The notes below the pieces were generated by a model. The model was not told the DNA's origin and did no database searches. It saw only the letters and a program-made list of their open reading frames with translations. Both the position numbers and the translations under genes were made by a program. From NCBI GenBank assembly GCA_001179505.1, contig CDMY01000683.1:1-31059 (forward strand): a stretch of 31,059 nt of DNA. The letters are read 5' to 3'. The DNA comes from Vitrella brassicaformis CCMP3155. Taxonomy: Eukaryota > Protista > Chromerida. Every line of letters starts with the position of its first letter. Position 1 is the first letter of the stretch. Shown in pieces: positions 840-28,673 of this stretch.

Positions 840-953
840 TCCGGTGCCAACAGGGCGGTGGTGGGTCTGTGTGACATACACAAAGTCGCGCTGTGATGAT
901 ATCAATCGGCACAGAGGTCGCCCTCATCGCTCTGGCTGCAGTTGTTGATCTGA
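840..953 (-). promoter_or_regulatory. Conserved intergenic element E, copy 1 (between divergent B1 and A1)
   Basis: Its reverse complement aligns to 18526-18636 with about 6 substitutions and one 3-nt indel (hand count). The function is inferred only from its position. Confidence 0.6.
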
Positions 954-1242
954 CGAATTGAAGTGCGGTGGGGTGGGCAGCAGGAGGTGATGTTGTCATT
1001 CGTGACAGCGTGTGTGATTTCTCTGTGTGTTTGTGGCGGATCTGTGACTCACAGGGTGAGATGGACCAACCGCCAGGATGCTTCGCCGGCATGTTCAACC
1101 TGTGGCGATGGCTGAAGGCCTCACTCACGGTGAGTCAGGCGAAAAAAGAAAGCACCACATGCAATCATGATGGCGCTGGCATATCTAAGACGACACACGC
1201 TGCGAACGGTGACCAATACTATCGCTGCAGAACGACACAATC

Positions 1243-5600: not shown

Positions 5601-8600
5601 CTGTCAGTCACACACGCATCGCATCAGTACGAAGAGAAGCGTGGCATCTTTACCCACCGTCTGTCTGTGTGGGTTTCGGGTCGTCTGTTAGAGTGCGATA
5701 AGCCTCCGTCGGTGTGAAGGCGATCTGTGTGTGCGCGAGAGTGCAGGCACACGCAGCCGTCCATCGCTGTCCATGCTGCCGACCTGTATGCGTCTGGTCT
5801 CCTGAGGGGCGAGTTTTGCGTACAGCGGGCCGATCGACAAGACGCTGTATGCATGTAGTACACGTGCGCGCGTCTCTTGTTTCTCCTTCGCTGTCTCTTT
5901 CTTTTTGTGTGTGCTGGACGGTACCTGAGCTCTACTGGTGGAGAGGCTATGTTGACCGTCTGTGTGTGCACACGCACACACACATCCGTCTTGGCATTTT
6001 CAGGCCTTCGCTCCACTCACTCACTCACCACATGGCTTTTGGTGCTGGTATTTTGGATGACGCAGCTCGCGCGCACCGACTCGTTTACCGGAATGCTGTC
6101 GACATACAGACATGAGACAGACAGGCACACGTGTACACGTCTGCACCGGTCGCAGGGGATGCGCTTGTGTGTACCGACCTGGCGAGTTTGCATATGGTGG
6201 GATATATGCGTATTGGGCAGAAGACGCCCTTGCCCGTGCACTTGATGGGCACCTGCAGAAGAACATTCGCGTCTCGGTGTGTGCAGGCCCCGCAAAGGGG
6301 CAGGTGTGTGTCGTTGGTTGCCTCTTTTGCACACAGGTCGCCGTATTGCACTTTGAGCTTCAGCGTCTCGCTCTGGGTGCATACACAAACCATGCACAAA
6401 CAAAGAGATGAGATAAGGTAGGTTGTGTGTACTTACTACCATGTCCATTGCTGCGTCTGGTGTGTATGTGACCATCAGGCGCTGCGTGTCGCCGCCTGCA
6501 TGCATGTAAAACAACGTGTTGTGGTGTGTTGTGTCAGTGATGTGACGCTTGCCTACCCAGTATGACGCCGATGCTATCTTCCTTCTCGATGGCTGGCCAC
6601 ACACACATACCCACACACGCACGTCTATGTGCATCACACACATCTGCACATACGTACGTGGCTCGTCCTCATTTTGGTTGCTGTCGTCCTGACACACACA
6701 CGCACACGCACACACATACACACACGCACACACGCACACACACACACACACACGGACAAATACACACACATGGAGCCACACATGTGACGTCAACTTACGT
6801 TTTGCGATCCGACGGGAAAAGCCTGCACACAGAGAGAGACACGGAGAGGTACAGACACAGAGAGAGACAGCAAAGAAACAGTCCACATACTCACATAAAC
6901 ACACACACCCATGGGGAAACGATATGTCTCACTTTGAAGATGCTTCTCATCTTGGTCAGCCCGTATGTGCAGGGCAGCATGCATCTGTTGGTCAGCCGCA
7001 CCAGCAGCGACCGGCCAGTACCCACAAACACCTGCATCCGTCGGCACACACGGGGATGCATGTGTTTGTGTCATCAATAATCCTGCCCTCGCACCGAGCC
7101 AAAATGCAGCTGCCTGCAAACACAGAGAGACACATACGGTGCTACCATGCAAATGCTGGCGCCGAGCCACGAACTTGGGCGTTATGTTTATCTTTGCCAG
7201 AGTGAGAGTGCCTGTGAGGTGCGTCACCGCCGGCAACACCTGCATATGTACCCAGCATTCACGCATTGATGTCCATATGTGTGTGGGCGTGTAGGTACCT
7301 GGTCAGCACCCCTGACAACCACAGGGATGTTGAAGCGATCGCACACCACACTAGCATCTGGTAATGATGATGGCGCAGCGACCTGATGGATGAACGACAC
7401 CCGTGCACATCCGTGTGTGCTGCTGCTGGTGGTGCGTACTGTCTCTGCTGCTGCTGGTGGTTGCTGCTCGTCGGCATCCTCGGCGCTTCCCCCTTCGTCT
7501 TCACCGCCCTCCTGCGCATTCGTGAATTCATTAACTAACACGCTCTTTCTCGTCTGCATGCCCTCTCTGTGGCTTATTCCTCCCCCTCTGTCTCACGTAC
7601 GTACGTCATCAGCACTTTTCTGTTCTTCCTGCGCGTCAGCCGCTCCCTCCTGCACACAGACAGACAGACAGACAGACACACCCAACTACACTGACATACA
7701 GAAAGACAGGGGGACAGAAGTGTGGGCGGATTTGTGTGCCTGTGTCTGCTGCTGCTGCTGCTGCTGGTCTTGTTGCTCCTGTAGGTGGTCGGTATATTGT
7801 GGGTGTCGGGTGCAGAAGCCCTCATGGGGGGCGAAGCGCACGTTGAGCACCAGAGACGAGTGGCCCTGCGTGTACACACACACACCCATTGGTGTGTGCC
7901 AGGTAGACGGGCAGATGGACATACACACTTGTATGAAGGCCATGGTGGGGTTGAAGGAGAGCTCCTCGGTGTTCTGGCTGGGCTGGTCGATCCATATCTT
8001 CATTGCCGTCGGCTGCCTGCATTGCAGTGCAGTCCATTCCGTTGTGTATGCACACACACACAGGCGATTTCCGCTTTTTTACCTGTTGCTGACCACAATC
8101 TGGTGGCGGAATGTGTGACCTGCCAGCCATAAGCGCACACACGGGTACATTCATGTGCGTTGATATGTCTCTCTCTGTCTCTCTGTGTGTCTCGCTGACC
8201 GTAGGTGATGGTGTTGAAGTCATAGATCGGCTGCTCGATGTACACCGGCACATCCACACACTCACAGCTGCACACACAGATACAGACACATACGCAGCTG
8301 TGCTCTGTGATAGTGTACCAGCCCACCTTAGGATGGCCACAGTGCTGTCCGTGTTCTGTGCGTCCAGCACAAACGCGGCAGTGTACACGCCGCTCTCCAC
8401 TGGGGAAAACTTCACGCACAAGGCACAGCAAGACACACAGTGGGTGGCGGGCGACTGATGCCGCTGACCCACCCTCCCACCCACCGTGAATTTGATCTTG
8501 TGCGTGTCGTGTGCCATGAAAGTGCCCTCCTTGCTGACGATGTCCAGGCGATCCACAAAGGCTTGGGAGCTGTCAAGTGCTGCATACACACACGCACACA

Positions 8601-13475: not shown

Positions 13476-15458
13476 ATGATGCTGTCGAGCAACGCTTCGC
13501 ACGATGAGGAAATCGCCGTCAGCGACATCCACACCACAGGTACACACACACACACTCACACACACACACACGCACTGCACGCATTCGTTCTGCCAACGTA
13601 TGTTTGTATGCGCCGTTCTCCCCACATGCAGGCCCCCTCACCAGCAGCAACGGCAAGCAGCGCCAGAACGGCACAAATCGTTTTTTAGCGTGGCTGTCGG
13701 TGGCTCTCACTGTCGCCCTCATAGCCGTATCGGCAGCACTCACCGGTGCGTACGGACATACCCATGGGCGCGTGAATGTGCACATGTGCGCGCGCGTGTG
13801 TGTGCAGTGGTGTGTCTGGGTGCTGCTGGGGGCAACAGCAAGGAGGCTGCACGCGTCAACCAGACCGGTGCGTACCCGCCCCCAGCTTTCCCCGCTGTGC
13901 CCTCATCGAGCACCGAGCCCATCGGTCAGTCAGTCCAGTCGGCAGATGCACCACACACAAGTGCGCTCCTTCCGTCACATTGTGTGTGTTACGTAGGCAT
14001 GATGTCCATCCCTGACCTGTACGAGGCCAACATGGAGGAGATATCATCCTTCGGCGCACTCACCATGCAGGCGCGGCCACACGCACACCCACCGAGACGA
14101 ACACTCAGTCATGGATGCGTGTGTGTTTGTCAATGAGTGAGTGCAGCTGTTGGGTGGGCGAGACGGCTGGTTCGGTGTCATCTCTGCCCAACAGGACGAG
14201 AGGACAGGTGGGCAGACACCCACCATACATAACATAACATAGCCCACACATACCAATGGGGATGGGTATGTGCGTCTCCCCATGCACCCAGGCAATGTCA
14301 TCGTCTTGCTGACACCGTCTGCCCCACTGAGCGAGGTATACACTTTCCACTCGTCCGTCCGTCCGTCCATCCATCCATCCATTCGTGTCTGTCTGTCTGT
14401 CTGTCTGTCTGCCCACGCACAGGATGAGATATATCGTCTGGATCAGGAGACTCAGGAGGAGTGGAACGAAATCGTAAGTGCAGTGCAAACATGTGGTGCT
14501 TCCGAACAGGCCTGCCTCGATGAATGTGCGAACAAACAGGACTGCGACCCTCTGATCGAGAAACTCGCCCCCTGGACACTCACCGTCGAGAAAGGTACGT
14601 AAGTGTCTGAGCCACTCTTCTTTGCTGCTTGGTTGGCAAATGTGTGTGTCTTTTCAGCTTCGGCGAGCGTTGCGGACGGCTGTGGCCGCACACAGGGCGT
14701 TGTGGAGGTGAGGACACACACTTGTATGCAGGCAGGCACACACACTCACACATGTCTGTGTTGCGCCGTAATGTGTGTGTATATCAGTGGCAACCTGAGC
14801 AGCCTGAAGCAGACGCAAACCAACTGAGTGCGTGTTGACGATAAACACATGGACGACGATCCACACCTGGTCTGTGCTGTGCAGGTGCTGACAAGAAGCC
14901 CCGCATCGGTGCCGAGGAGGGCGGCTCCAGCAGCAGCGACAAGGGCGATGACCAGCAAGAAGACGACGGAGGTAACATAACAGAGGGAGAGACAGAGACA
15001 TGCCTGACTGACACGGCTTTGTGCTGTGTGAGTGTGTGTGTTTGTAGGGGATCGGCGTCGTTTGGGTCAGTACAGGTCTAAGGTCGGCAAGCTGTGTCTC
15101 GTGCAGTCCTGCGGCGGTATCACCTGTAAGTGACCACCAGTGCACCACTCCACGACGCCACACCGGCGACACACACCACACACGTTGTGTGTTGTCTGTC
15201 TGTCTGTGCATTGCAGTCAGGCTGAACCCCTACCTTGACGCACAGAGGCCCTACCTCGGGATGGCCTACAATCCCTACCCCTACAGCCAAGCAGTGGCAG
15301 CAGCGGGGGCCCCGCCCCCGGTGCAGTACGTCCAGCCGGTGGTCAACGGGGGTGCGGCGGGCAATGCCATCGGCGCCCCTGGCACTGGCGTGGCGCCACT
15401 TGGGAGCGGCATTGGTGAGGTGCCGGGCAGCGTCCCCGCCGGAATCGGCGGGCCTTAG
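13476..15458 (+). CDS. Hypothetical membrane-anchored/secreted protein (about 11 exons)
   Basis: Exons stitch in phase: MMLSSNASHDEEIAVSDIHTT / GPLTSSNGKQRQNGTNRFLAWLSVALTVALIAVSAALT (hydrophobic helix) / GMMSIPDLYEANMEEISSFGALTMQ / LLGGRDGWFGVISAQQDERTG / NVIVLLTPSAPLSE / DEIYRLDQ...TCGASEQACLDECANKQDCDPLIEKLAPWTLTVEK / ... / GDRRRLGQYRSKVGKLCLVQSCGGIT / RLNPYLDAQRPYLGMAYNPYPY...GIGGP*. No family recognised. Confidence 0.75.
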
Positions 15459-16651
15459 ACGAGATGCCATGAGAGAGAGGTCCGTGCAGTGTCAGTGTCA
15501 GTGTGTTTGTGTGTGGAGTTGGTCTCGTGTGGTCTATCTAGTACTCGCCTTTTTATTGTGTGTCGATACGGTATGGGATCGATGAGGTGGATGACGCAAT
15601 CGTGTGCCTTGTGTGGTTTTGTTTTCCTTTGTGTGAAGCAAGGCGGCCGCACAGAGAGCCACAAAGCCACACAGAGAGCATTGCGTGTATGCTATGTAGC
15701 CCTGCCATGCGTGTGTGTATTTTCTTACCACCCGATGGGAGTAGGTGCTTGTCGATTGTGGCGGATGAGATGAGTGTGAGTGCGTGATATACTATATATG
15801 CCTGCCTCCCTCCCCGCCCCCTCTGTGTCAGTCGTGCGTGAGACACAACGTGTGTGCATACGCGTGTGTGTGCATGGGGGTGCGTACGAGGGATCGCACA
15901 GAGAGACTGTCTGACCTCTGAGTGAGTGAGTGGGTGAGACCTTTTTCAGTTTCTTCAACCAAAGCCACACGGTCGATCGACGATCGATGCAGACAAGCTC
16001 ATGGACACAGGCAGATCACAGCAGTGACACCTGTCAGCAGTACAAACAACGTATGCGCTTCCCGATCGACGCACAGACAGACAGACAGACAGACGGGCTA
16101 CCGCACACACAGCACACCCCTCCATGTGGCACACGCACGAAGACAAAATTAGCAGGCCCCACGTATAATAGGGCCTTAACAAGCACCCCAGCCATCCCCG
16201 CGTTCGCCTGCAATGGGAAAAAAGCCTCCCAGCACAACGACCCGATTTACTTGCAAGCTTAGACGTGCAACAGCCACTCACTCGACTAGGAGGGGGGCGG
16301 GAGAGAGGGAGGGGTACAGGTGCGGATCGTTTGTATGATGCGTCACAGTCCATCCGTCGTGGATGCGCATGCGTGTGTGTGTGCGCTGGCCATACATGTC
16401 GAAAGCGAATTAACGTCATGTCAACACGCGCACGCACTCAAACAAACAATACAGCAATCCATCCATCCATCTATCCCCATTACAGCCCATCACTGTCGTC
16501 GAAGGTCACCCGTGGGCGGGAGGCACGCACCGAGCACTCACACACTGCATGGTTTCGTCCATCAGACGCGGTCTGTCTGTCTGTCTGTCTGTCTGTCCGC
16601 TGACCGATGAGGAAGACAGTGAGGAACTCTCTTCTGCCTCCCTTGACCAAT

Positions 16652-18094
16652 TCACCTCTCAACCCGTTCCCACCACACTGTGTCTCCCAGGTCATCCCCC
16701 AACACACCCATCACGGCAACACGCGTGCGGTCATGCGGGGCCGACTCGGTCGTGAAGATGACAATCTTTCGTGCATCATCATCCCCATCCCCTCTCTCTC
16801 TCGCCAGCCAAATCGCTGCCATCTTCCCCTCGTCGATCGCCTCACTCCCCAAGACCACCAGCCGCTCATGGCGTGCCCCCTCACGCTTCTTGTCGAAGAT
16901 CGTCACCCCTGGCCCCCACTGTGCCACTCCGTTGTTGTTGTGAGAGGCCATCAGCAGCTCATTTACACGACGGTATGCGGCGGAAGAAGGGCAGAAACAC
17001 CACAACCACCGGATGCGCCGGAGGTTCTGGTTTTGGCGGCCGCGACGGAGCCAATCGACCAGGACGAAAGCCACCATCGACGAGTAAGTGCAATACGTCC
17101 AGCTGTCCATCTGCGTGGGCCGGTCGGCGGGGTCAAACGTGTCAGGAAAAAGTGGGCTGGGACTGGCGATACAGGAGGGCAGACGGTATTCGTAGTGCCA
17201 CGAGTCGAGAATCTTGATGCCGGACATCAGACGTATCTGTTGTCCTCCACTATGGAAAGTCAACCCCCGGCTGAGTATCTTCCACTGGCGGACCGCCTCG
17301 CTCCGGCCGACGAAGGCCGTCCGGCTGCCGAACACGCTGAGGTAATCATGCCGCAGCACCAACGGCACCTTGCCGCAAAGGTGATAGAGTAGCTGCAGAT
17401 GCGGCCGACACCTTGCCCAATCGCCACCATACTCCAGCGTGAACAGCAGCCGGGTCAGCTGCTCGACAACGGCACTGGTGGCCCCGCCCTGGGTCAGCTG
17501 GTAAAGGGGCACCTGCACCAGGCCGCCAAAGATAGTGGCCACCATGAAGGGCAGCAGTCGTGTGAGGATGGGCAAGAGGACGGCGGCGGTGAATTGTGTG
17601 GGATGGGCGTCGATGAGGGCCTCCAGCTGCGAGTAGCTCTTGACGTACTCGGCGATGGTGATTGCGAGGTGCTGCGGCACATCAGCGGCACTGATGGCGC
17701 GCTCAACTGGCACACACACACACAGACACAAACATATAGACAGCGGTTTCAGGCACATTATGCATTGCTTCTGCGAACCATTGATGGTGCCGTTCATGAG
17801 TGTGACGATGAGGAGGGCGGGGGGCGGGCGAGAGGTGACAAACACCTGATAGTTGAGGTGGCCGTACCTACACACACACGCAGAGAGAGAGAGAGAGAGA
17901 GCTGCACTGACTGTGTGTGTTGTCTAACCATTCACGGCATCGATGCTGTCTGTGTGTCCGTACCAGGTTGGTGGGTTGTCCCAGGACCCTCGCCCGTCGT
18001 GCATGACGAATTCCATCCCGCCGCTCTCATCAGGGACCTCAACACGAACCTTCACCCAGCCGCGCCCAACGCCCTGGTCACCGAGGGTAAGCAC

Positions 18095-18125
<31 letters not shown>

Positions 18126-18284
18126 CATGCACACACTCAATGTACGCGGACTGATTCCCTCCGACCCCTTTGTGTGTGCCTTGCGGACCTTCATGTGGAC
18201 GTCCCGCCATGTGCCTTGTCCGTGAGGACAGTAGTGCACCGCACAATTGGGCCAGCCCGTTTGGTATCGCAACTCAATCAGCAT
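16652..18284 (-). CDS. Family A protein, copy A2, with N-terminal CBM25-like starch-binding module
   Basis: Exons 18284-18180, 18073-17964 and 17867 onward join in phase (0, then TG|G = Trp) into the open frame of ORF 16652-17875. The N-terminus reads MLIELRYQTGWPNCAVHYCPHGQGTWRDVHMKVRK-GVGRGWVKVRVEVPDESGGMEFVMHDGRGSWDNPPTWYGHLNYQV, followed by the family A domain. Confidence 0.75.
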
Positions 18285-18525
18285 CCGATTCGCTCGACAA
18301 CCGACACAACAAACGGATCGTCAGCCTGTCAAGAACACACCGCGTGAACACACGCTGATGATGCACGCCCTCTTCTCTCTGTAGATGTACCTCTGTCTGC
18401 CACCGGCAAAGATCAACAACGCAATGAGGTATCTCAAACCTGCCACAAACACACAGAAAACACACACAGTGGCATCGCTGACCCTGTGATCCCCCTCCGG
18501 CTTGTCCTCCCTTTACACCTCGTCC

Positions 18526-18636
18526 TCAGATCAGCTGCAGCCAGAGCGATGATGCCGACATCTGTGCCGATTGATACCATCACAGCGCGTCTTTGTGTAT
18601 GTCACACAGACCCACCACCGCCCTGTTGGCACCGGA
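18526..18636 (+). promoter_or_regulatory. Conserved intergenic element E, copy 2 (between divergent A2 and B2)
   Basis: Near-identical to the reverse complement of 840-953. Confidence 0.6.
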
Positions 18637-18839
18637 ATGCGAAAAAAAGGGGAAGCCCGCAGGCAGGCCCACGAATTGCGCCAACTTAGCTCGCAGGCCG
18701 ATCCGGGCGAGCAGAAAACTGGGTTTGTTGGTTGCGCTGTCAACTATGTTTGTGTGGATGCAGATCTCTCTCACAGGCACGCCACGCTGAAGCTCATTCA
18801 GCCGCTGGCCTTTCATGTGCTGACTGAGTGATTGTGGCG

Positions 18840-19879
18840 ATGTCTGATTCGTTGCCCGACGACCTGTGGCGCCGGCGCATTCTGCCGTCCCTTCTCGTCC
18901 ATGAGGCGGTCTGTGTCCGAGCGACCTGCCGGGCGAAGGCGGCTCTAGTGACGACCGCTGTGCTGCTGATGGAGCGCATCGACGGCTCCCTCGCCCGCCG
19001 CTCCCTCACCGGCCTCATCGACATCGACCGCACCGCCCCTCTCCCATTCACCTATGTGCTGCGGGCGGCCTATGTGCTGGAGCAGGGCAGCAACGAGTGG
19101 CCTGGGATGGGGCGGTTCATCCGGCTGGCCGCCATCTATCGGCTGACGCCTGCCAACGGGCTGCCCCTGGTGCTGTCGGCTCAGTGGCTGACAGCCCACC
19201 TTCCCAGCAGGACGGCATTCCACCAGCTGCCATTGGCGATGGCCATCTATCGGCTGTTCGGCCACCTGCTCACACACAACACACACAGCCTGGCGCTGCA
19301 GCCGGCCGACAACGGACACTATCGGATTGGCAACATGACCTTTCGTGTGGTGCCGTTGGGTGAGCTGCCGGGCGGCCATCCTTATGCTGACGGCTACAAG
19401 AGGACCGATCCCGCCATCCGACGGGGCGGCAACCTCTACCCCTCCTTCTCGGCAGCATTCCTGCTTGAGAGGCTGCTCGTCAGGTGGTGGGATGGAGAGG
19501 GGGTGGGTCAGAGGCTGGTGCTCACTTCACACATCGGCCGTGATGACGCTCGCTATGGCCGTCTGCTGAGGACTGACTCCATCACAGAGGATCTGGGCAT
19601 CGTCGCCGACTGGCGTTACGACCGGGGCGATCTGGATGCTGCTGGTGCGACTGACTGTCGTCGTGTGGTAGTGAGCGGCTTCAGACCAGGCGAGACCGTC
19701 GCTGCCCATCTGAGGGTGACGCCGGGCTGCATCCAGCTGTACACTATGAGCCATCTGCTGCCAATAGGTCTGCATCACTCGCCCACCGCTTTCCCATCTC
19801 GGAGCCCGTGTGGCGCCGTGTGCTGCGGCGGTACAATCTGGAGAGTGACGTCATCGACAGGGGGACGGTGATGTGGTGA
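18840..19879 (+). pseudogene. Family B copy B2, F-box-like N-terminus, apparent 1-nt deletion near 19746
   Basis: ATG 18840 gives MSDSLPDDLWRRRILPSL... The body aligns with B3 (LE.GS.EW..MGRF.R.A.IYRLTP, AFHQLPL.MAIY, QADNG.YRIGN, DYRDDRGDL). After TACACTA the B3-homologous tail (EPSAANRSASLAHRFPISEPVWRRVLRRYNLESDVIDRGTVMW*) lies in another frame and ends at TGA 19877-19879. An assembly error cannot be excluded. Confidence 0.7.
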
Positions 19880-20118: not shown

Positions 20119-20419
20119 NNNNNNNNNNNNNNNNNNNNNNNNNNNNNNNNNNNNNNNNNNNNNNNNNNNNNNNNNNNNNNNNNNNNNNNNNNNNNNNNNN
20201 NNNNNNNNNNNNNNNNNNNNNNNNNNNNNNNNNNNNNNNNNNNNNNNNNNNNNNNNNNNNNNNNNNNNNNNNNNNNNNNNNNNNNNNNNNNNNNNNNNNN
20301 NNNNNNNNNNNNNNNNNNNNNNNNNNNNNNNNNNNNNNNNNNNNNNNNNNNNNNNNNNNNNNNNNNNNNNNNNNNNNNNNNNNNNNNNNNNNNNNNNNNN
20401 NNNNNNNNNNNNNNNNNNC
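20119..20419. other. Assembly gap (~300 N)
   Basis: Run of N. Confidence 0.98.
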
Positions 20420-20863: not shown

Positions 20864-22908
20864 AGGTCCCATGAAGCCACGCTGTCATCCAACCGACTCT
20901 CGTGCTCCATCCGCCACACCTTGCCCCCCAGCTGCCGCCCCAGTACTCTCATGACGGCATTGCGCGTCCTGTCGTGAGGGACAGACTCCGTCGTGTACAC
21001 TTTGACAAACATTCCTTTCCCAGCCCGGAAATCCACAAAGTAAATGACTGCGGTATTCGCCCCTCCCATCACCTCACTCCCCAGCACCACCAGCTGCCAA
21101 CGCCATCGACCCGCCCAGCTCTTTTCGAACACCGCCACCCCCGGCCCCCACTGTGACGCATCGCTGTGAGGGGCCGCCAGCAGCTCACGCGCACGCCGGT
21201 GTCCGAAAGAAGCCGGAGAGAAAGACCACCCGTTTTTGATCCAACGGGTAGTACTATCGTCGCCTCGAACAAGCAAGCCGCGGAGCCAGTCGAAGAGAAC
21301 GAAGGCCACCATCGATGTGTAGGTGGGGTGCACTTCGCTGTCCAGCTGTGTGGGCCGGTCGGCGGGGTCGAATGAATTCGGAAAGACGGGGCTGGACGAG
21401 ATGAGCAGGGAGGGGCGGCTGGACCAGACAGTCTTACGGCAGAGAATCTTGTCGCCGTCCATCAGCAGTCTCTCTTGGCCGTTGTCATTCACAGTCACCC
21501 CTCGGCTGATTATCTTCCACTGGCGGACCGCCCCTCTTTTGCCAAAGAAGGCCGCCCGTCTGCCGAACACGCCGACAACGACGAAAGACAATCTGCGCAC
21601 TGCTGTTGGCAGAGACACTCAGGCACCGAGCCAGCCATTCACCGCCATCGTGCCGCTCCCGTCACACTTCACTCAGCAGGTGCTCCCCCAGCAAACCCAT
21701 CGCCGCACTGCGCGTCTGGTCGTGCGGGGCAGACTCGGTCGTCGTGACATCAACAAATTGGTGATCGTCCCAATCGTCCAGCCGAATGACCGCCACGTTT
21801 CCCTCAACGACCGCCTCACTGCCCAGCACCACCAGCCGCTCATGGCCCTCACTCCACCGGGGTTTCCTGTCGAACACGGCCGCCCCCGCCCCCCACTGCG
21901 CCGCATCGCTGGGACGGGTCGCCAGCAGCTGACACACACGCCGGAATGCAGCAGAGGAATGTGACCAGTCCTCGATGCGACAAATGTAGTAGTCGCGCTT
22001 GACCAGGAGAACAGGACGAATGCCACCATCGATGAGTAGGTGGCGTATGTCCAGGCCATCAGCTCTGTGGGCGGATCGGCGGGGTCGAATGCATTGGGGA
22101 AGAGGGGGCTGGGTGCGGCGAGGATGGTCGGGAGGCGCCAGGCCCAGCCAGCGTGGAGGCGAATGTAGTTGCCGTACATCAGGCATATCTGTTTGCCTAG
22201 ATCACGGAAAGTCGCCACACGGCTAAGAACCCTCCTCTGCTGGACCGCCTCGCTCTCGCCGATGAAGGCCTCCCGGCTGCCGAACGCGCTGAAATGCTCA
22301 TCGCCCAGCACCACTGGCCGCTTCCGGCGCATGTGATACAGCAGCTCCAAATGAGGCCGCCACCTCGACAAACCGCCGCCACCCTCCAGCATCTTGAGAT
22401 GGCGGCTCAGCTGCTCGATGGCGACTGCCATGCGGCAGCCGTGGCTGAGCGCCGCAGGAAGCGGCAGCCGGGGGATGACCCTCATCAGGAATGAGCCGAG
22501 GCCGACAATGGGCAGCAGCACGCCCAATACACGCATGAGGAGGGGCAGGAGAAATCGGCTGAGGGCGCCGCGACGAAGGGACGAGGCCATCGGAGCAGCA
22601 GCCGCCACGTCCATGGCCAGCTGAGGAATGGGTACCTCCACGAGAGCACCAAAGACGGCTTCCACAACGACGGGTAGCAGTCGGATGAGAATGTGTAGGA
22701 TGACGGTGGGGTTAAATTGTGTGGGGTGGGCGTCGATGAGGGCCGCCAGCTGTGAGTAACTCCTGACGTACTCGGCAACTGTTGGCGCGAGATCTTGCGG
22801 CACGTCAGAGACGCTAATGCCGCACTCATGCTTCTCCTGCTGCTGGTGCTGCTGGTGGTTGGCAAACGACGCTGTGCTGGTACCTGCCCAACAGACCGCC
22901 ATACTCAC
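20818..22908 (-). pseudogene. Family A copy A3 with two tandem A domains, disrupted
   Basis: ORFs 21673-22908 and 21662-22186 are one A domain split by a 1-nt deletion near 22002 (W-[L]KRDYY). TGA at 21662-21664 sits where other copies have Trp (KVWR). A second frame break near 21575 leads into a second A domain (ORF 20818-21618). A possible upstream exon starts at ATG 23043 (MSAAAAAADGVGPS). Confidence 0.75.
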
Positions 22909-25088: not shown

Positions 25089-28000
25089 TTAGGCAGCCGA
25101 GAACTGAGTCTTCTTGGCCTGTGCGTGGCAGTGCTGGGCCGTCCTCAGCAGCAGGTCGTTGAAGTCCCGTGTGTGCCGCAGTCTGTCGTCGAGGGCCGCG
25201 TCGTAGAAGTGCTGCTTCTGCTCGGGTGGCAGGAGTGCGTCGGGGAGCTGCTTGAGTGCATCCAGGAAGACCTCCTTGCCCTCAGGCCGGTCCAGCAACG
25301 GGATCAGCGCACTCGACGTTATGCCCACGCCCTGAGGGATGTCTGCACACACAAAGACAGCGGGATGGTGTGAGTGCGTCTGCTCTCTCTCTCTCTCTCT
25401 CTGTCTGTGCGTGTGTCGGTGTCACGTATATGCACCGATGGCTGTCGTGGCGATGACCTTGAGCAGCACCTGGATGACCACAACCAGGCCGCCCTCCTGC
25501 AGTATCAGCCGTGAGGCCGCCTGACGGGCGCCGGCCTCCTCTGCACGGAACGTCTCAGCCGACACGCGAAAGTGGGGCAGCCGGGTCACATCTTAAACAC
25601 AACACCCAGACACATAACACACGGCAATATACACTCATCGAGGGCATTCTGATGTGTGAAAGACTGACATTTCTCGTCGGCGAGCCATGCGTCCAGCCGG
25701 GCGAGAAACAGCAGCATCACGGCACCCAGCTGTCAATCACGACAGACACACAGACACACACGATGCACAGCAGGGGTGGTGTGCGCCCATGTGGCTGGCT
25801 GGCCGACCTTCGGATGTGCACAGTCGGGTAGCATCTCAAAGACGAATCGCAGGAGGGCGGGGAACCACTGAGCGTTGAGGACCTCCTTGGCGAGGGCCGG
25901 GTGGCTGAGCACCAGGCCCTGGTTGAAGCAGTCGATCGACAGACCCACCAGGTCTGGATGACGCAGGTACTGCGTCACCTCGGGCGCCGGCTGGGCACCT
26001 AGTTGACACACACACCGACACACACAATGAGTGCTGTGTCTTTCTCCTGTGTGTGGGTTATGTGTTGTGACGGACTGACCAGTTGTGGGCTGCCTTTGGC
26101 TGAGTGCGACCTCGGCGAGCAGCTGGAGGAGGTCGCGCAGCCCGTGGACCACAGGGGGGTCGAAGGAGCGGCCGAACATGCCGACGATCTGTGGACACAC
26201 ACCAGACAGACAGACAGACAGACATCGACGAGGGAATGGGCGGCAAACAGAGAGGTAGGGGTGTGTTTGCTGACCGATCTGAGAGCCCCCAGGTGGAAGC
26301 ATGTGGGTGTGTTGCGGAAGCTGCTGCCCATCACACGCAGCACCGGGTGAAACAGACTGCGCAAGGGGAACAGACACATGGATGGATTGACAGATACGAC
26401 GATATGGCCATAGTGCAGCTTGCCTTGAGTCCATGGCCTGTTCCCTGGTGTCTGATATGATCTGGGTGATGGCCTGGCACACAGGCTCCATTATCGCCTC
26501 ACTCGACCCTACACACACACACACACACACACATCCATCCATCCATCCACACGAGCATTCTGCCTGCCCGTCTGCTGCCTGACCGTGTTCAGCGAAGAGC
26601 CTCTCCACCAGCGGCCACTCCTTCTCCAGCACTATCAGTGTCGGGTGCGCATTCCGCTGCGCTTCAGACACGCCATTGGCTGCAACCAACACACACAGCA
26701 CCCATGTGTATGCATGACGCGTTGCCCACCACACTGACCTTCCTCTCCCTTTGGCATTGGCGGGTGGGGGGCAGCCCCTGCGCCGCAACACACACCGGCC
26801 AAGTCGCTCCGCACACTTCTGCATCCATCAATTCCATGAGAGAATGGATGGATGGATGGATGGAGACCGACAAACACCATGGGCGGGTGTGCTGACTTGA
26901 GTGCGGTGCAGAAGTGGCGCACGTCATCGACCAGCGACGACCGGCGACCTGCGAGCGACTCGCGGACTAAATCCGCCAACGGCTGCGCACGTACGCACAC
27001 GCACACGGACGCACACGTGTGTGGGGTATATGCCACNNNNNNNNNNNNNNNNNNNNNNNNNNNNNNNNNNNNNNNNNNNNNNNNNNNNNNNNNNNNNNNN
27101 NNNNNNNNNNNNNNNNNNNNNNNNNNNNNNNNNNNNNNNNNNNNNNNNNNNNNNNNNNNNNNNNNNNNNNNNNNNNNNNNNNNNNNNNNNNNNNNNNNNN
27201 NNNNNNNNNNNNNNNNNNNNNNNNNNNNNNNNNNNNNNNNNNNNNNNNNNNNNNNNNNNNNNNNNNNNNNNNNNNNNNNNNNNNNNNNNNNNNNNNNNNN
27301 NNNNNNNNNNNNNNNNNNNNNNNNNNNNNNNNNNNNGGGGGGGGGGGGGGCTGCCTACCTTGACGAGGTGGTAGTGTGTTTCCTCCAGCTTTGGGCGCGA
27401 GAGGTGGCTGATGAGTGTGCCCGCCGACGACACCAATGTGCCCTTCTCCTCACAATCAACATATGTACTGAACACACGGACACACACACGAGTGTATCGT
27501 GTGTGGGTCGTCTGTGTGTCGTCGACCTACCTCATAATGAGCACGGCGAGCGGCTTGAGGGCCCGCAGGATGTCCTCACTCCCGCGCACCGTCATGATTT
27601 CCTGACCTGCACACACACACGCACACGATGGTGGAAGCGATTGTGTGTGTACTGCACGGCCATCTCACCACTTGAGCAGAGAGCCTGTATGGCGCAGACG
27701 CACACGTGCATGCCCGACTCGCGGAGAGACGCATCAGACACCTGACCTCCCACACACATGGATGGATGGATGGATGGATGGCTCCATGCGCACCTGTGCC
27801 TGCCCGAGAAAGGGCATCAACTGCTCGGTGAGTAGGGCGTAAATGGGTGCAAAGAGCTGTGGCATGAGGCCGATGTACCCCGATGTGAAGTAGACCAGCC
27901 GGCTGGCCGTCTGCCGCAGCAGCACCGCTGCCACACCTGAACTGGGGTACGGCAATGACGGAAGCGCCTCCAACGTCTGAAAAAAGTGTCGCACAGATGG

Positions 28001-28673
28001 ATGGATGGATGTACGTGGCGCATGTGGCCGTGCAGACCTGTGGGATGACATTGTCTTCGCCGGCCGGTGCGCGTGGCGCCACGGCCGTCAGCACAAAGAG
28101 ACAGCCCTCAAGCGCCTCCCACGGAGGCAGCACAACACCCTGACAGACAGATAGACAGACAGACAGACAGACACAGACAGCGTGTTGTGTGTCGTGTGTT
28201 GTGTGTGTGGTGGTGTGGTGTGGTGTGGCCCACCTGCCCTGCCCCCTCCTGCTTAAATCTCTCCAGCTGCTGGCCCACTGTGTTGAGGGCGTGGGTGTAG
28301 CCCACCAGCCGGCAGCTCTCCGTCAGCAGAGTGGCACACTCGTCGCGGAACTGATGGAACAGCTGCAGGCACAGCACACCCACACACAAGCACACAGACC
28401 GACCGACACATGAGGAGCCTGCATTGCGCGTGTGTGTGTGTGTCTGACGGTGAACTGGAAGTCTTGTTGTGTTTCGCAGGCCTTGGGGTAGCGCAGCACC
28501 TCCATCAGCACAGACACCATCCTAACCCAACACACACATACACACACGGCTACATTACTCAAGGCGATGAGCCAACGCACCCACTCACTTGGTGAAGAGG
28601 GGCTTGAGGAGCTCCCTGAGCTCTTGCCGAACCGCCGACCGATCGGTGCTCACCAAAGGGATCACCTGCGCCT

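What the first reader, a model, noticed from the sequence alone, without database searches (positions are those of the whole stretch)
17770..18284. CBM25-like starch-binding domain spliced onto a family A protein
Three exons invisible in the ORF track join in exact phase and give Y-x-T-G-W...HY...G-x-W...GWVKV-x-V-E...EF-x-x-x-D-G-x-G-x-WDN...NY...TL-x-NG-x-I. This follows the pattern I recall for bacterial CBM25 modules of Bacillus-type amylases (Y.TGW..PHIHY...G.W...GYVKVTIE...FNNG.G.WDN...Y...TL.DG.I). It continues without a stop into the A domain. A1 and A3 lack it and have short unrelated N-termini, so it looks like an acquired, swappable module. Apicomplexans store amylopectin (established; chromerids presumably do too), so this could target the A/B system to starch granules or act as a glucan sensor analogous to an integrated domain. 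A bacterial origin followed by intron gain is possible (inference).
Basis: partly seen in the sequence, partly recalled or inferred. Interest (0 to 1): 0.75.

Follow-up and report, generated by a model that had tools for sequence, protein, structure and literature searches.

The report
Starch-binding module on orphan alga protein
A gene of the alga Vitrella brassicaformis really does start with a divergent CBM25-type starch-binding module, copied from another Vitrella gene and spliced onto a protein family of unknown function, which the public annotation misses because it starts the protein 30 residues too late.

Summary
On the minus strand, three coding exons (18284-18189, 18073-17964, 17867-17779) join in phase to exon 17706-16652 and give a 449-codon ORF. 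A spliced contig of a public run shows these junctions, and the public gene model uses them too. One correction: the first donor is at 18188, not 18180.

The window is a whole contig of Vitrella brassicaformis CCMP3155. The module belongs to the CBM25 family.
- Exons c and d, searched alone, each find the Bacillus halodurans CBM25 structure 2C3V, in colinear order.
- A profile of the Vitrella copies hits three CBM25 structures (E 2e-7 to 2e-5).
- A 61%-identical paralog passes Pfam's CBM_25 threshold.
- Four of the five ligand residues of 2C3V are kept.

No Pfam model hits the window's own pieces.

The module was not inserted here from bacteria. Its closest relatives are two other Vitrella genes that share its intron positions. 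An ultimately bacterial origin stays open.

Of 37 family A proteins found, only this one carries the module. The A domain matches no known family or fold. Starch tethering is inferred, not shown.

Other first-stage notes report CBM25-like modules elsewhere in this genome; I did not check them.

The parts
18519..18640 (-). Leader exon a (5' end approximate). Carries an upstream ORF that starts at ATG 18580.
   Evidence: 91% identical to 840-956 upstream of copy A1 and alignable with the A3 leader. Its junction to exon b is seen in a run X5 contig.
18391..18439 (-). Leader exon b, non-coding for the main ORF
   Evidence: Joints 18437>18517 (skips 79) and 18324>18390 (skips 65) in X5; the latter also in X1. 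The flanking introns are GT..AG.
18189..18325 (-). Exon c. Main start codon at 18284, then the first 32 codons of the CBM25 module, holding the equivalents of His26 and Trp34 of 2C3V.
   Evidence: Contig piece 18188-18324 in X5 and X1. In-frame stop at 18323-18321. Only PDB hit is 2c3v_A, residues 13-35. Both paralogs start with the same N-terminal motif, preceded by a stop in the S6PP-type transcripts.
18074..18188 (-). Intron 1 of the coding part, phase 0, 115 nt, with a (GTCT)n repeat
   Evidence: X5 joint skipping 115 nt; GTCCGC..CCAG. Same position and phase in P0038 and in the S6PP-type gene.
17964..18073 (-). Exon d, the middle of the CBM25 module, holding the W-D-N ligand motif (Trp74, Asp75, Asn76 of 2C3V)
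   Evidence: X5 contig piece. Top PDB hit is 2c3v_A, residues 48-76. It is the only six-frame fragment of the window hit by a Bifidobacterium CBM_25 repeat.
17868..17963 (-). Intron 2, phase 2, 96 nt
   Evidence: GT..AG. Absent from X5 record 20, as the arithmetic shows. Homologous position in both paralogs. DNA homology to the P0038 locus runs through it.
17779..17867 (-). Exon e, the last strands of the CBM25 module
   Evidence: The 86 unplaced letters of X5 record 20 equal this exon's remainder plus 3 nt. Present in public model P0001. The P0038 gene has an exon of the same length, 89 nt.
17707..17778 (-). Intron 3, phase 1, 72 nt, in frame and without a stop, yet spliced out
   Evidence: Shared with P0038 and absent from the S6PP-type gene.
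16652..17706 (-). Exon f, the family A domain (about 350 aa) and the stop codon
   Evidence: Paralog homology starts exactly at this exon's start. 37 Vitrella relatives. Contiguous contigs 16608-17703 in X5.

Best explanation
The stretch encodes the N-terminal CBM25-family starch-binding module, about 98 residues, of a 449-codon Vitrella brassicaformis gene. The coding exons are 18284-18189, 18073-17964, 17867-17779 and 17706-16652 on the minus strand. The rest of the protein is one copy of a Vitrella-specific family of unknown fold ('A', at least 37 paralogs).

Shown:
- the gene structure and its splicing to the A domain;
- kinship with CBM25;
- retention of four of the five ligand-contact residues of 2C3V;
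- origin by DNA-level duplication from another intron-bearing Vitrella CBM25 gene.

Inferred history: a starch-linked gene such as the CBM25-S6PP/HAD phosphatase donated its 5' exons. These replaced the usual low-complexity N-terminal exons of an A gene, which kept the family's leader exon.

Inferred function (about 55% likely): the protein starts directly with the module and has no signal peptide, so it is cytosolic. The single module binds alpha-glucan chains of Vitrella's cytosolic starch with modest affinity and brings the A domain to the granule surface. What the A domain does there is unknown.
For: Splicing and ORF.

CBM25 kinship:
- Exons c and d alone both find 2c3v_A, colinearly.
- Exhaustive phmmer with P0001:1-72 finds P0038 (E 4e-22), P0039 (E 9e-17) and a Bifidobacterium protein with three Pfam CBM_25 domains (E 2.3e-4).
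- The full N-terminal domain of the S6PP-type paralog scores 28.7 bits on Pfam CBM_25, above the cut-off of 27.3.
- A profile of the Vitrella domains, including window exon c, hits 2c3v_A at E 2.2e-7 and 2laa/2lab at about 2e-5.
- The ESM Atlas model of the paralog's residues 1-104 is nearest to bacterial amylases with CBM_25 (TM 0.75 by query).

Ligand residues: W34, W74, H26, D81 and N76 are given in PMC4625611. H, W, W and N are matched in the alignments.

Constraint: dN/dS is 0.33-0.42 against the paralogs.

Intragenomic origin: shared intron positions and phases, and intron-spanning DNA homology to the P0038 locus.

Setting: Vitrella stores starch in the cytosol (bioRxiv 10.64898/2026.09.25.754361).
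Against: - No Pfam hit for the window's exons or for the truncated public model, even at E 10.
- The AF2 model of the closest full-length paralog domain is weak (pLDDT 62) and finds no CBM25 fold by Foldseek.
- Asp81 of 2C3V cannot be aligned.
- One CBM25 alone binds granular starch weakly (Kd about 30 uM; PMC3398936).
- dN/dS is higher on this lineage than between the two paralogs (0.16).
- An upstream ORF of 52 codons overlaps the main ATG.
- Transcript depth is low.
- No binding or localisation data exist.
Confidence: 0.75

Rival explanations
1. A young chimeric gene without a selected function. Exon shuffling put CBM25 exons in front of one A copy by accident. The product is transcribed, but the module is drifting and does nothing useful.
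For: - Only 1 of 37 family members carries the module.
- dN/dS of 0.42 against P0038 is well above the 0.16 seen between the two paralogs.
- Contig depth is low.
- An upstream ORF overlaps the start codon.
- The sister copy P0038 has lost the His26 equivalent and most of the A domain.
Against: - The ORF is intact over 449 codons and all splice sites are canonical.
- Four of the five ligand residues are kept.
- dN/dS is clearly below 1.
- The gene is spliced correctly in two runs.
Confidence: 0.15
2. The module acts as a glucan-sensing or 'integrated' domain of a diversifying A/B recognition system, or aims an E3-ligase-type adaptor at starch-bound proteins, rather than being a simple tether.
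For: - A is a large, fast-diverging, lineage-specific family with variable heads.
- A and B ORFs sit head to head twice in the window.
- The sister gene P0038 carries RING-finger pieces after the module.
- UniRef names one member an F-box protein.
Against: No F-box, RING or other known domain is detectable in the A proteins by Pfam, by PDB profiles or by fold search. No interaction data exist.
Confidence: 0.07
3. A direct transfer of a bacterial CBM25 into this locus, with the introns gained afterwards.
For: CBM25 structures and the only non-Vitrella hit with a Pfam CBM_25 domain are bacterial. No relative from another eukaryote was recognised among the hits at E 1e-3 in 1.84 billion representatives; only the three best-supported hits had their source looked up.
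Against: The closest relatives (61-72% identity) are Vitrella genes with introns 1 and 2 at identical positions and phases. Intron sequence itself is homologous to the P0038 locus. Bacterial modules are under 40% identical.
Confidence: 0.02
4. A chance resemblance, or a different beta-sandwich family such as CBM53, CBM26 or an Ig-like domain.
For: No direct Pfam hit. P0038 scores about equally poorly on CBM_25 (E 0.083) and CBM53 (E 0.096). Some phmmer hits are Ig-repeat proteins.
Against: Two exons independently pick the same CBM25 chain, in order. The profile's three top PDB hits are all CBM25. The paralog passes the CBM_25 gathering score and shows no CBM53 hit.
Confidence: 0.01

Closest known systems
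CBM25 of Bacillus halodurans alpha-amylase G-6 (PDB 2C3V) and of Paenibacillus polymyxa beta/alpha-amylase (2LAA, 2LAB)
   Same: Colinear sequence match over about 65 residues (profile E 2e-7 to 2e-5). The His26, Trp34, Trp74 and Asn76 equivalents are kept. About 100 residues, predicted all-beta.
   Different: The known modules are bacterial, secreted, attached to amylases and often tandem. This one is eukaryotic, interrupted by introns, single, at the very N-terminus of a cytosolic protein, and joined to a non-catalytic orphan domain. Identity is only about 25-30%. Asp81 is not alignable.
Vitrella brassicaformis CEM33027.1 (UniRef A0A0G4GR71), CBM25 + sucrose-6F-phosphate phosphohydrolase-like HAD domain
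   Same: 61% identical module that starts at Met1. Introns 1 and 2 lie at the same positions and phases. UniRef already names it a CBM25 protein.
   Different: Its module runs without an intron into a HAD phosphatase domain, and only the exons are alignable at the DNA level.
Vitrella brassicaformis CEM02272.1 (P0038)
   Same: 72% identical module. All three introns are shared, and the intron DNA is homologous. It has the same junction into the first 14 residues of the A domain.
   Different: After those 14 residues it continues into RING-finger pieces and low-complexity sequence instead of the A domain. The His26 equivalent is Arg.
Non-catalytic starch-targeting proteins such as plant PROTEIN TARGETING TO STARCH (CBM48 + coiled coil; PMC4339375)
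   Same: The working principle proposed here: a CBM brings a non-glycoside-hydrolase partner to the granule.
   Different: A different CBM family, a different partner and a plastid location. No homology is claimed. This comparison rests on the paper's title and abstract and on general knowledge.

Membership tests
CBM25 (CAZy) / Pfam PF03423 CBM_25 | Match to the family HMM at or above the curated score | tested here: inconclusive
   Window exons singly and the truncated public model P0001 give no hit at E 10. The 61%-identical paralog domain (L002:19-330) scores 28.7 bits against a cut-off of 27.3. P0038:1-105 reaches only E 0.083. The joined full-length window protein was not scanned.
CBM25 (CAZy) / Pfam PF03423 CBM_25 | Significant sequence kinship with experimentally characterised CBM25 modules | tested here: met
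   Profile A3, which includes window exon c and P0001:1-72, hits 2c3v_A at E 2.2e-7 and 2laa_A/2lab_A at about 2e-5. These are the three top PDB hits. P0001:1-72 hits a Bifidobacterium protein with three CBM_25 domains at E 2.3e-4 among 1.84 billion proteins.
CBM25 (CAZy) / Pfam PF03423 CBM_25 | Ligand-binding residues of 2C3V: W34, W74, H26, N76, D81 | tested here: met
   The residue list comes from PMC4625611. Alignments place window His (exon c), Trp (exon c) and Trp-Asp-Asn (exon d) at H26, W34 and W74-D75-N76. D81 lies beyond the aligned stretch, so 4 of 5 are matched.
CBM25 (CAZy) / Pfam PF03423 CBM_25 | Beta-sandwich fold of starch-binding modules | tested here: inconclusive
   AF2 of P0038:1-104 with a 4-row alignment gives an all-beta model at pLDDT 62, with no usable Foldseek match. 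The ESM Atlas model of paralog P0046 residues 1-104 is nearest to CBM_25, CBM_20 and CBM26 amylase modules (TM 0.70-0.77 by query). The window's own full domain could not be folded.
CBM25 (CAZy) / Pfam PF03423 CBM_25 | Binding to starch or alpha-glucan | not testable with these tools
   Needs a pull-down or ITC with recombinant protein.
CBM53 (Pfam PF16760, starch synthase III type) | Match to the family HMM | tested here: not met
   Only P0038:1-105 gives E 0.096 (13.4 bits; cut-off 27.6). No CBM53 hit for the S6PP-type domain or for window pieces.
F-box (considered for the head of the A domain) | Match to F-box HMMs or to solved F-box proteins | tested here: not met
   No Pfam family in 25 members at E 10. 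A PDB profile search of the head region finds no F-box protein, and neither does the whole family profile. UniRef's 'F-box' name for P0016 is not reproduced here.

The most novel reading that the evidence does not exclude
Vitrella has put CBM25 modules in front of parts of the protein-turnover machinery. One sits on a RING-finger gene (P0038) and one on a member of the fast-diversifying A family, whose head may be a very divergent F-box. Together they would form starch-granule-directed ubiquitin-ligase adaptors, working like the laforin-malin pair on glycogen but built from unrelated parts.
Probability: 0.1. Interest if true: 0.7.

Novelty: new member of a known kind. Interest (0 to 1): 0.4.

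Why it matters
CBM25 is known almost only from secreted bacterial amylases. This is an intron-bearing, cytosolic eukaryotic copy, reused by exon shuffling on at least three different partners in one chromerid: a HAD phosphatase, a RING-type gene and an orphan family.

It gives the first functional handle, a likely place of action at the starch granule, for one member of a large Vitrella-only family with no known fold.

It corrects a public gene model: the true start is 30 codons upstream of the annotated Met, and that truncation hides the domain.

It also flags CBM25-bearing proteins that a 2026 survey of myzozoan starch metabolism does not mention.

Biochemically the module itself is ordinary.

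Tried and rejected
- Pfam on single exons and on the public model P0001: no hit. The pieces are too short or truncated, so this is not evidence of absence.
- PDB search with exon e alone: nothing.
- AF2 of the closest full-length paralog domain with 4 rows: pLDDT 62, and the Foldseek matches are meaningless.
- Word-based search with P0046 residues 1-104: only itself.
- A domain:
  - Pfam on 25 members: nothing.
  - PDB profile: nothing.
  - AF2 at pLDDT 74, but the best Foldseek E is 0.02 and the best VIA Z is 6.2, on generic alpha/beta sheets.
  - ESM Atlas: nothing usable.
  - F-box test of the head region: negative.
- B ORFs and other large ORFs of the window: no Pfam family.
- ATG 18580 in the leader exon as the true start: rejected. 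After splicing its frame ends at TGA 18280-18278, out of frame with the module (with the junctions).
- Retention of the in-frame 72-nt intron 3: rejected by the contig arithmetic and by paralog homology starting at exon f.
- Low-GC bins in the window are two 300-N gaps, not biology.
- Phmmer hits P0040-P0042, P0044 and P0045 are repeat or low-complexity proteins without CBM domains and were set aside.

Full report
**What is there.** The window is a whole 31,059-bp contig of Vitrella brassicaformis CCMP3155. The public protein P0001 matches it at 100% and its longest contig has that same length. Paralogous loci lie in assembly GCA_001179505.1.

On the minus strand I read these coding exons:
- exon c, 18325-18189, with ATG at 18284 and an in-frame stop at 18323-18321;
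- exon d, 18073-17964;
- exon e, 17867-17779;
- exon f, 17706-16652.

Two leader exons lie upstream (about 18640-18519 and 18439-18391). All five introns are GT..AG. The four coding pieces sum to 1350 nt, which is 449 codons plus the stop.

**Transcript evidence.** I laid Logan contigs of four public runs on 15600-19400. Run X5 holds one 520-nt contig whose pieces lie at 18188-18324, 17958-18072 and 17610-17703. Its joints skip 115, 65 and 79 nt and have CT..AC ends on the + strand. The 86 letters of that contig between the exon d piece and the exon f piece equal the remaining 83 nt of exon e plus 3 nt of exon f. So exon e is included and the in-frame 72-nt intron 3 is removed.

X5 depth in the bins over introns equals what exon-only coverage predicts, so X5 behaves as RNA. 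Its library type is not on record. X1, from another study, shows the 18324>18390 joint as well. X3 is colinear with the genome across introns and so behaves as DNA.

The public model P0001 uses the same three coding junctions but starts at the second in-frame Met (ATG 18194). That drops 30 residues.

Each exon alone, and P0001, give no Pfam hit. The other evidence is as follows.
- Exon d alone has 2c3v_A, the Bacillus halodurans CBM25, as its top hit among 177,635 PDB sequences (residues 48-76). Exon c alone has it as its only hit (residues 13-35). The two matches are colinear.
- An exhaustive phmmer of P0001:1-72 against 1.84 billion representatives found two close relatives, P0038 (72% identity, E 4e-22) and P0039 (61%, E 9e-17). 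It also found a Bifidobacterium protein with three Pfam CBM_25 domains (E 2.3e-4).
- Transcript contigs of the P0039 gene give its full N-terminus, which starts at Met1 right after a stop. That 104-residue domain scores 28.7 bits on Pfam CBM_25, above the gathering score of 27.3. UniRef already calls the full-length protein (CEM33027.1) a CBM25 protein.
- A profile of the Vitrella domains, with window exon c and P0001:1-72 as rows, hits 2c3v_A at E 2.2e-7 and 2laa_A/2lab_A at about 2e-5. These are the three best PDB hits and all are CBM25.
- The ESM Atlas model of the paralog's first 104 residues is closest to bacterial amylases with CBM_25 (TM 0.75 by query).
- A Bifidobacterium CBM_25 repeat searched against the six-frame window hits only the exon d fragment.
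- My AF2 model of the P0038 domain was too weak (pLDDT 62) to test the fold.

The ligand residues of 2C3V are W34, W74, H26, D81 and N76 (PMC4625611). The window protein keeps His, Trp, Trp and Asn at the aligned positions. D81 lies outside the alignment.

**Where the module came from.** Intron 1 (phase 0, after residue 31/32) and intron 2 (phase 2, in the Trp codon before YGH) are at the same places in the window gene, in P0038 and in the S6PP-type gene. Intron 3 (phase 1) is shared with P0038 only.

DNA homology between the window and the P0038 locus runs from exon d through introns 2 and 3 (18061-17711; 68% over 380 nt). Against the S6PP locus only the exons align. P0038 also keeps the first 14 residues of the A domain after the module.

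So a CBM25-A fusion arose inside the Vitrella genome from an intron-bearing CBM25 gene and was duplicated later. A direct bacterial insertion at this locus is not supported. The remote origin of Vitrella's CBM25 remains open.

Exon-wise dN/dS is 0.42 against P0038 and 0.33 against the S6PP type. This means constraint, though weaker than between those two paralogs (0.16).

**The partner.** The A domain has 37 relatives, nearly all named from Vitrella or unnamed. It matches no Pfam family, no PDB sequence and no convincing fold, despite a fair model at pLDDT 74.

All other members have Ser/Ala-rich and His/Gln-rich N-termini. None of them carries the module. The window's other copies (1216-2301 +, 21653-22827 -, 20914-21576 -) lack it too. 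The gene keeps the family's conserved leader exon (91% identity to 840-956).

My tests did not reproduce it.

**How it most likely works.** The protein begins with the first strand of the module and has no signal peptide. Vitrella keeps its starch in the cytosol, around the pyrenoid (bioRxiv 10.64898/2026.09.25.754361). CBM25 has one binding site for single alpha-glucan chains. A lone module binds granular starch with a Kd of about 30 uM (PMC5715617, PMC3398936).

The best reading is therefore a modest-affinity tether that brings the A domain to starch. This step is inferred. The A domain's activity is unknown.

**Verdict.** The fusion is real and expressed. The proposed bacterial-transfer history does not hold for this locus. 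Starch targeting is plausible but untested. This is a new, divergent member of a known module family in a new architecture, of moderate interest.

Noticed in passing
window 18194 versus 18284 (-); L002:19-105: The public model of this gene (P0001, 419 aa) starts at the second in-frame Met and lacks 30 residues, among them the His26 and Trp34 equivalents. The JGI model P0039 of the S6PP-type paralog is cut short in the same way.
   Followed up: yes
window 18580-18278 (-, spliced); 896-960 (+); 23393-23333 (-): The leader exon shared by copies A1, A2 and A3 carries a conserved short upstream ORF. In A2, splicing extends it to 52 codons, ending at TGA 18280-18278 and overlapping the main ATG. In A1 and A3 it stops inside the leader exon.
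   Followed up: partly
L001:4558-5060 (Vitrella CDMY01000322.1, gene of P0038 / CEM02272.1): Pieces of a RING finger lie on separate frames, split by GT-started gaps. The public model reads through one of these gaps, so the RING is not recognisable in P0038.
   Followed up: partly
L005:3001-5244; L002-L004: A Vitrella HAD phosphatase of the sucrose-6F-phosphate phosphohydrolase family (Pfam S6PP, E 6e-44) carries an N-terminal CBM25. It is a candidate starch-associated phosphatase that the 2026 preprint on myzozoan starch metabolism does not mention.
   Followed up: partly
Contig depth over 18900-19400 is 10-50 times the local baseline in all four runs, so this is a multi-copy family.
   Followed up: partly
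window 20119-20418 and 27037-27336: Two runs of 300 N (scaffold gaps) cause the low-GC bins. ORFs listed across them are artefacts.
   Followed up: yes
window 18095-18127 and at least five other sites (7652-7684, 14385-14412, 16072-16110, 16571-16605, 28136-28179): A (GTCT)n microsatellite lies in intron 1 and recurs across the window.
   Followed up: no
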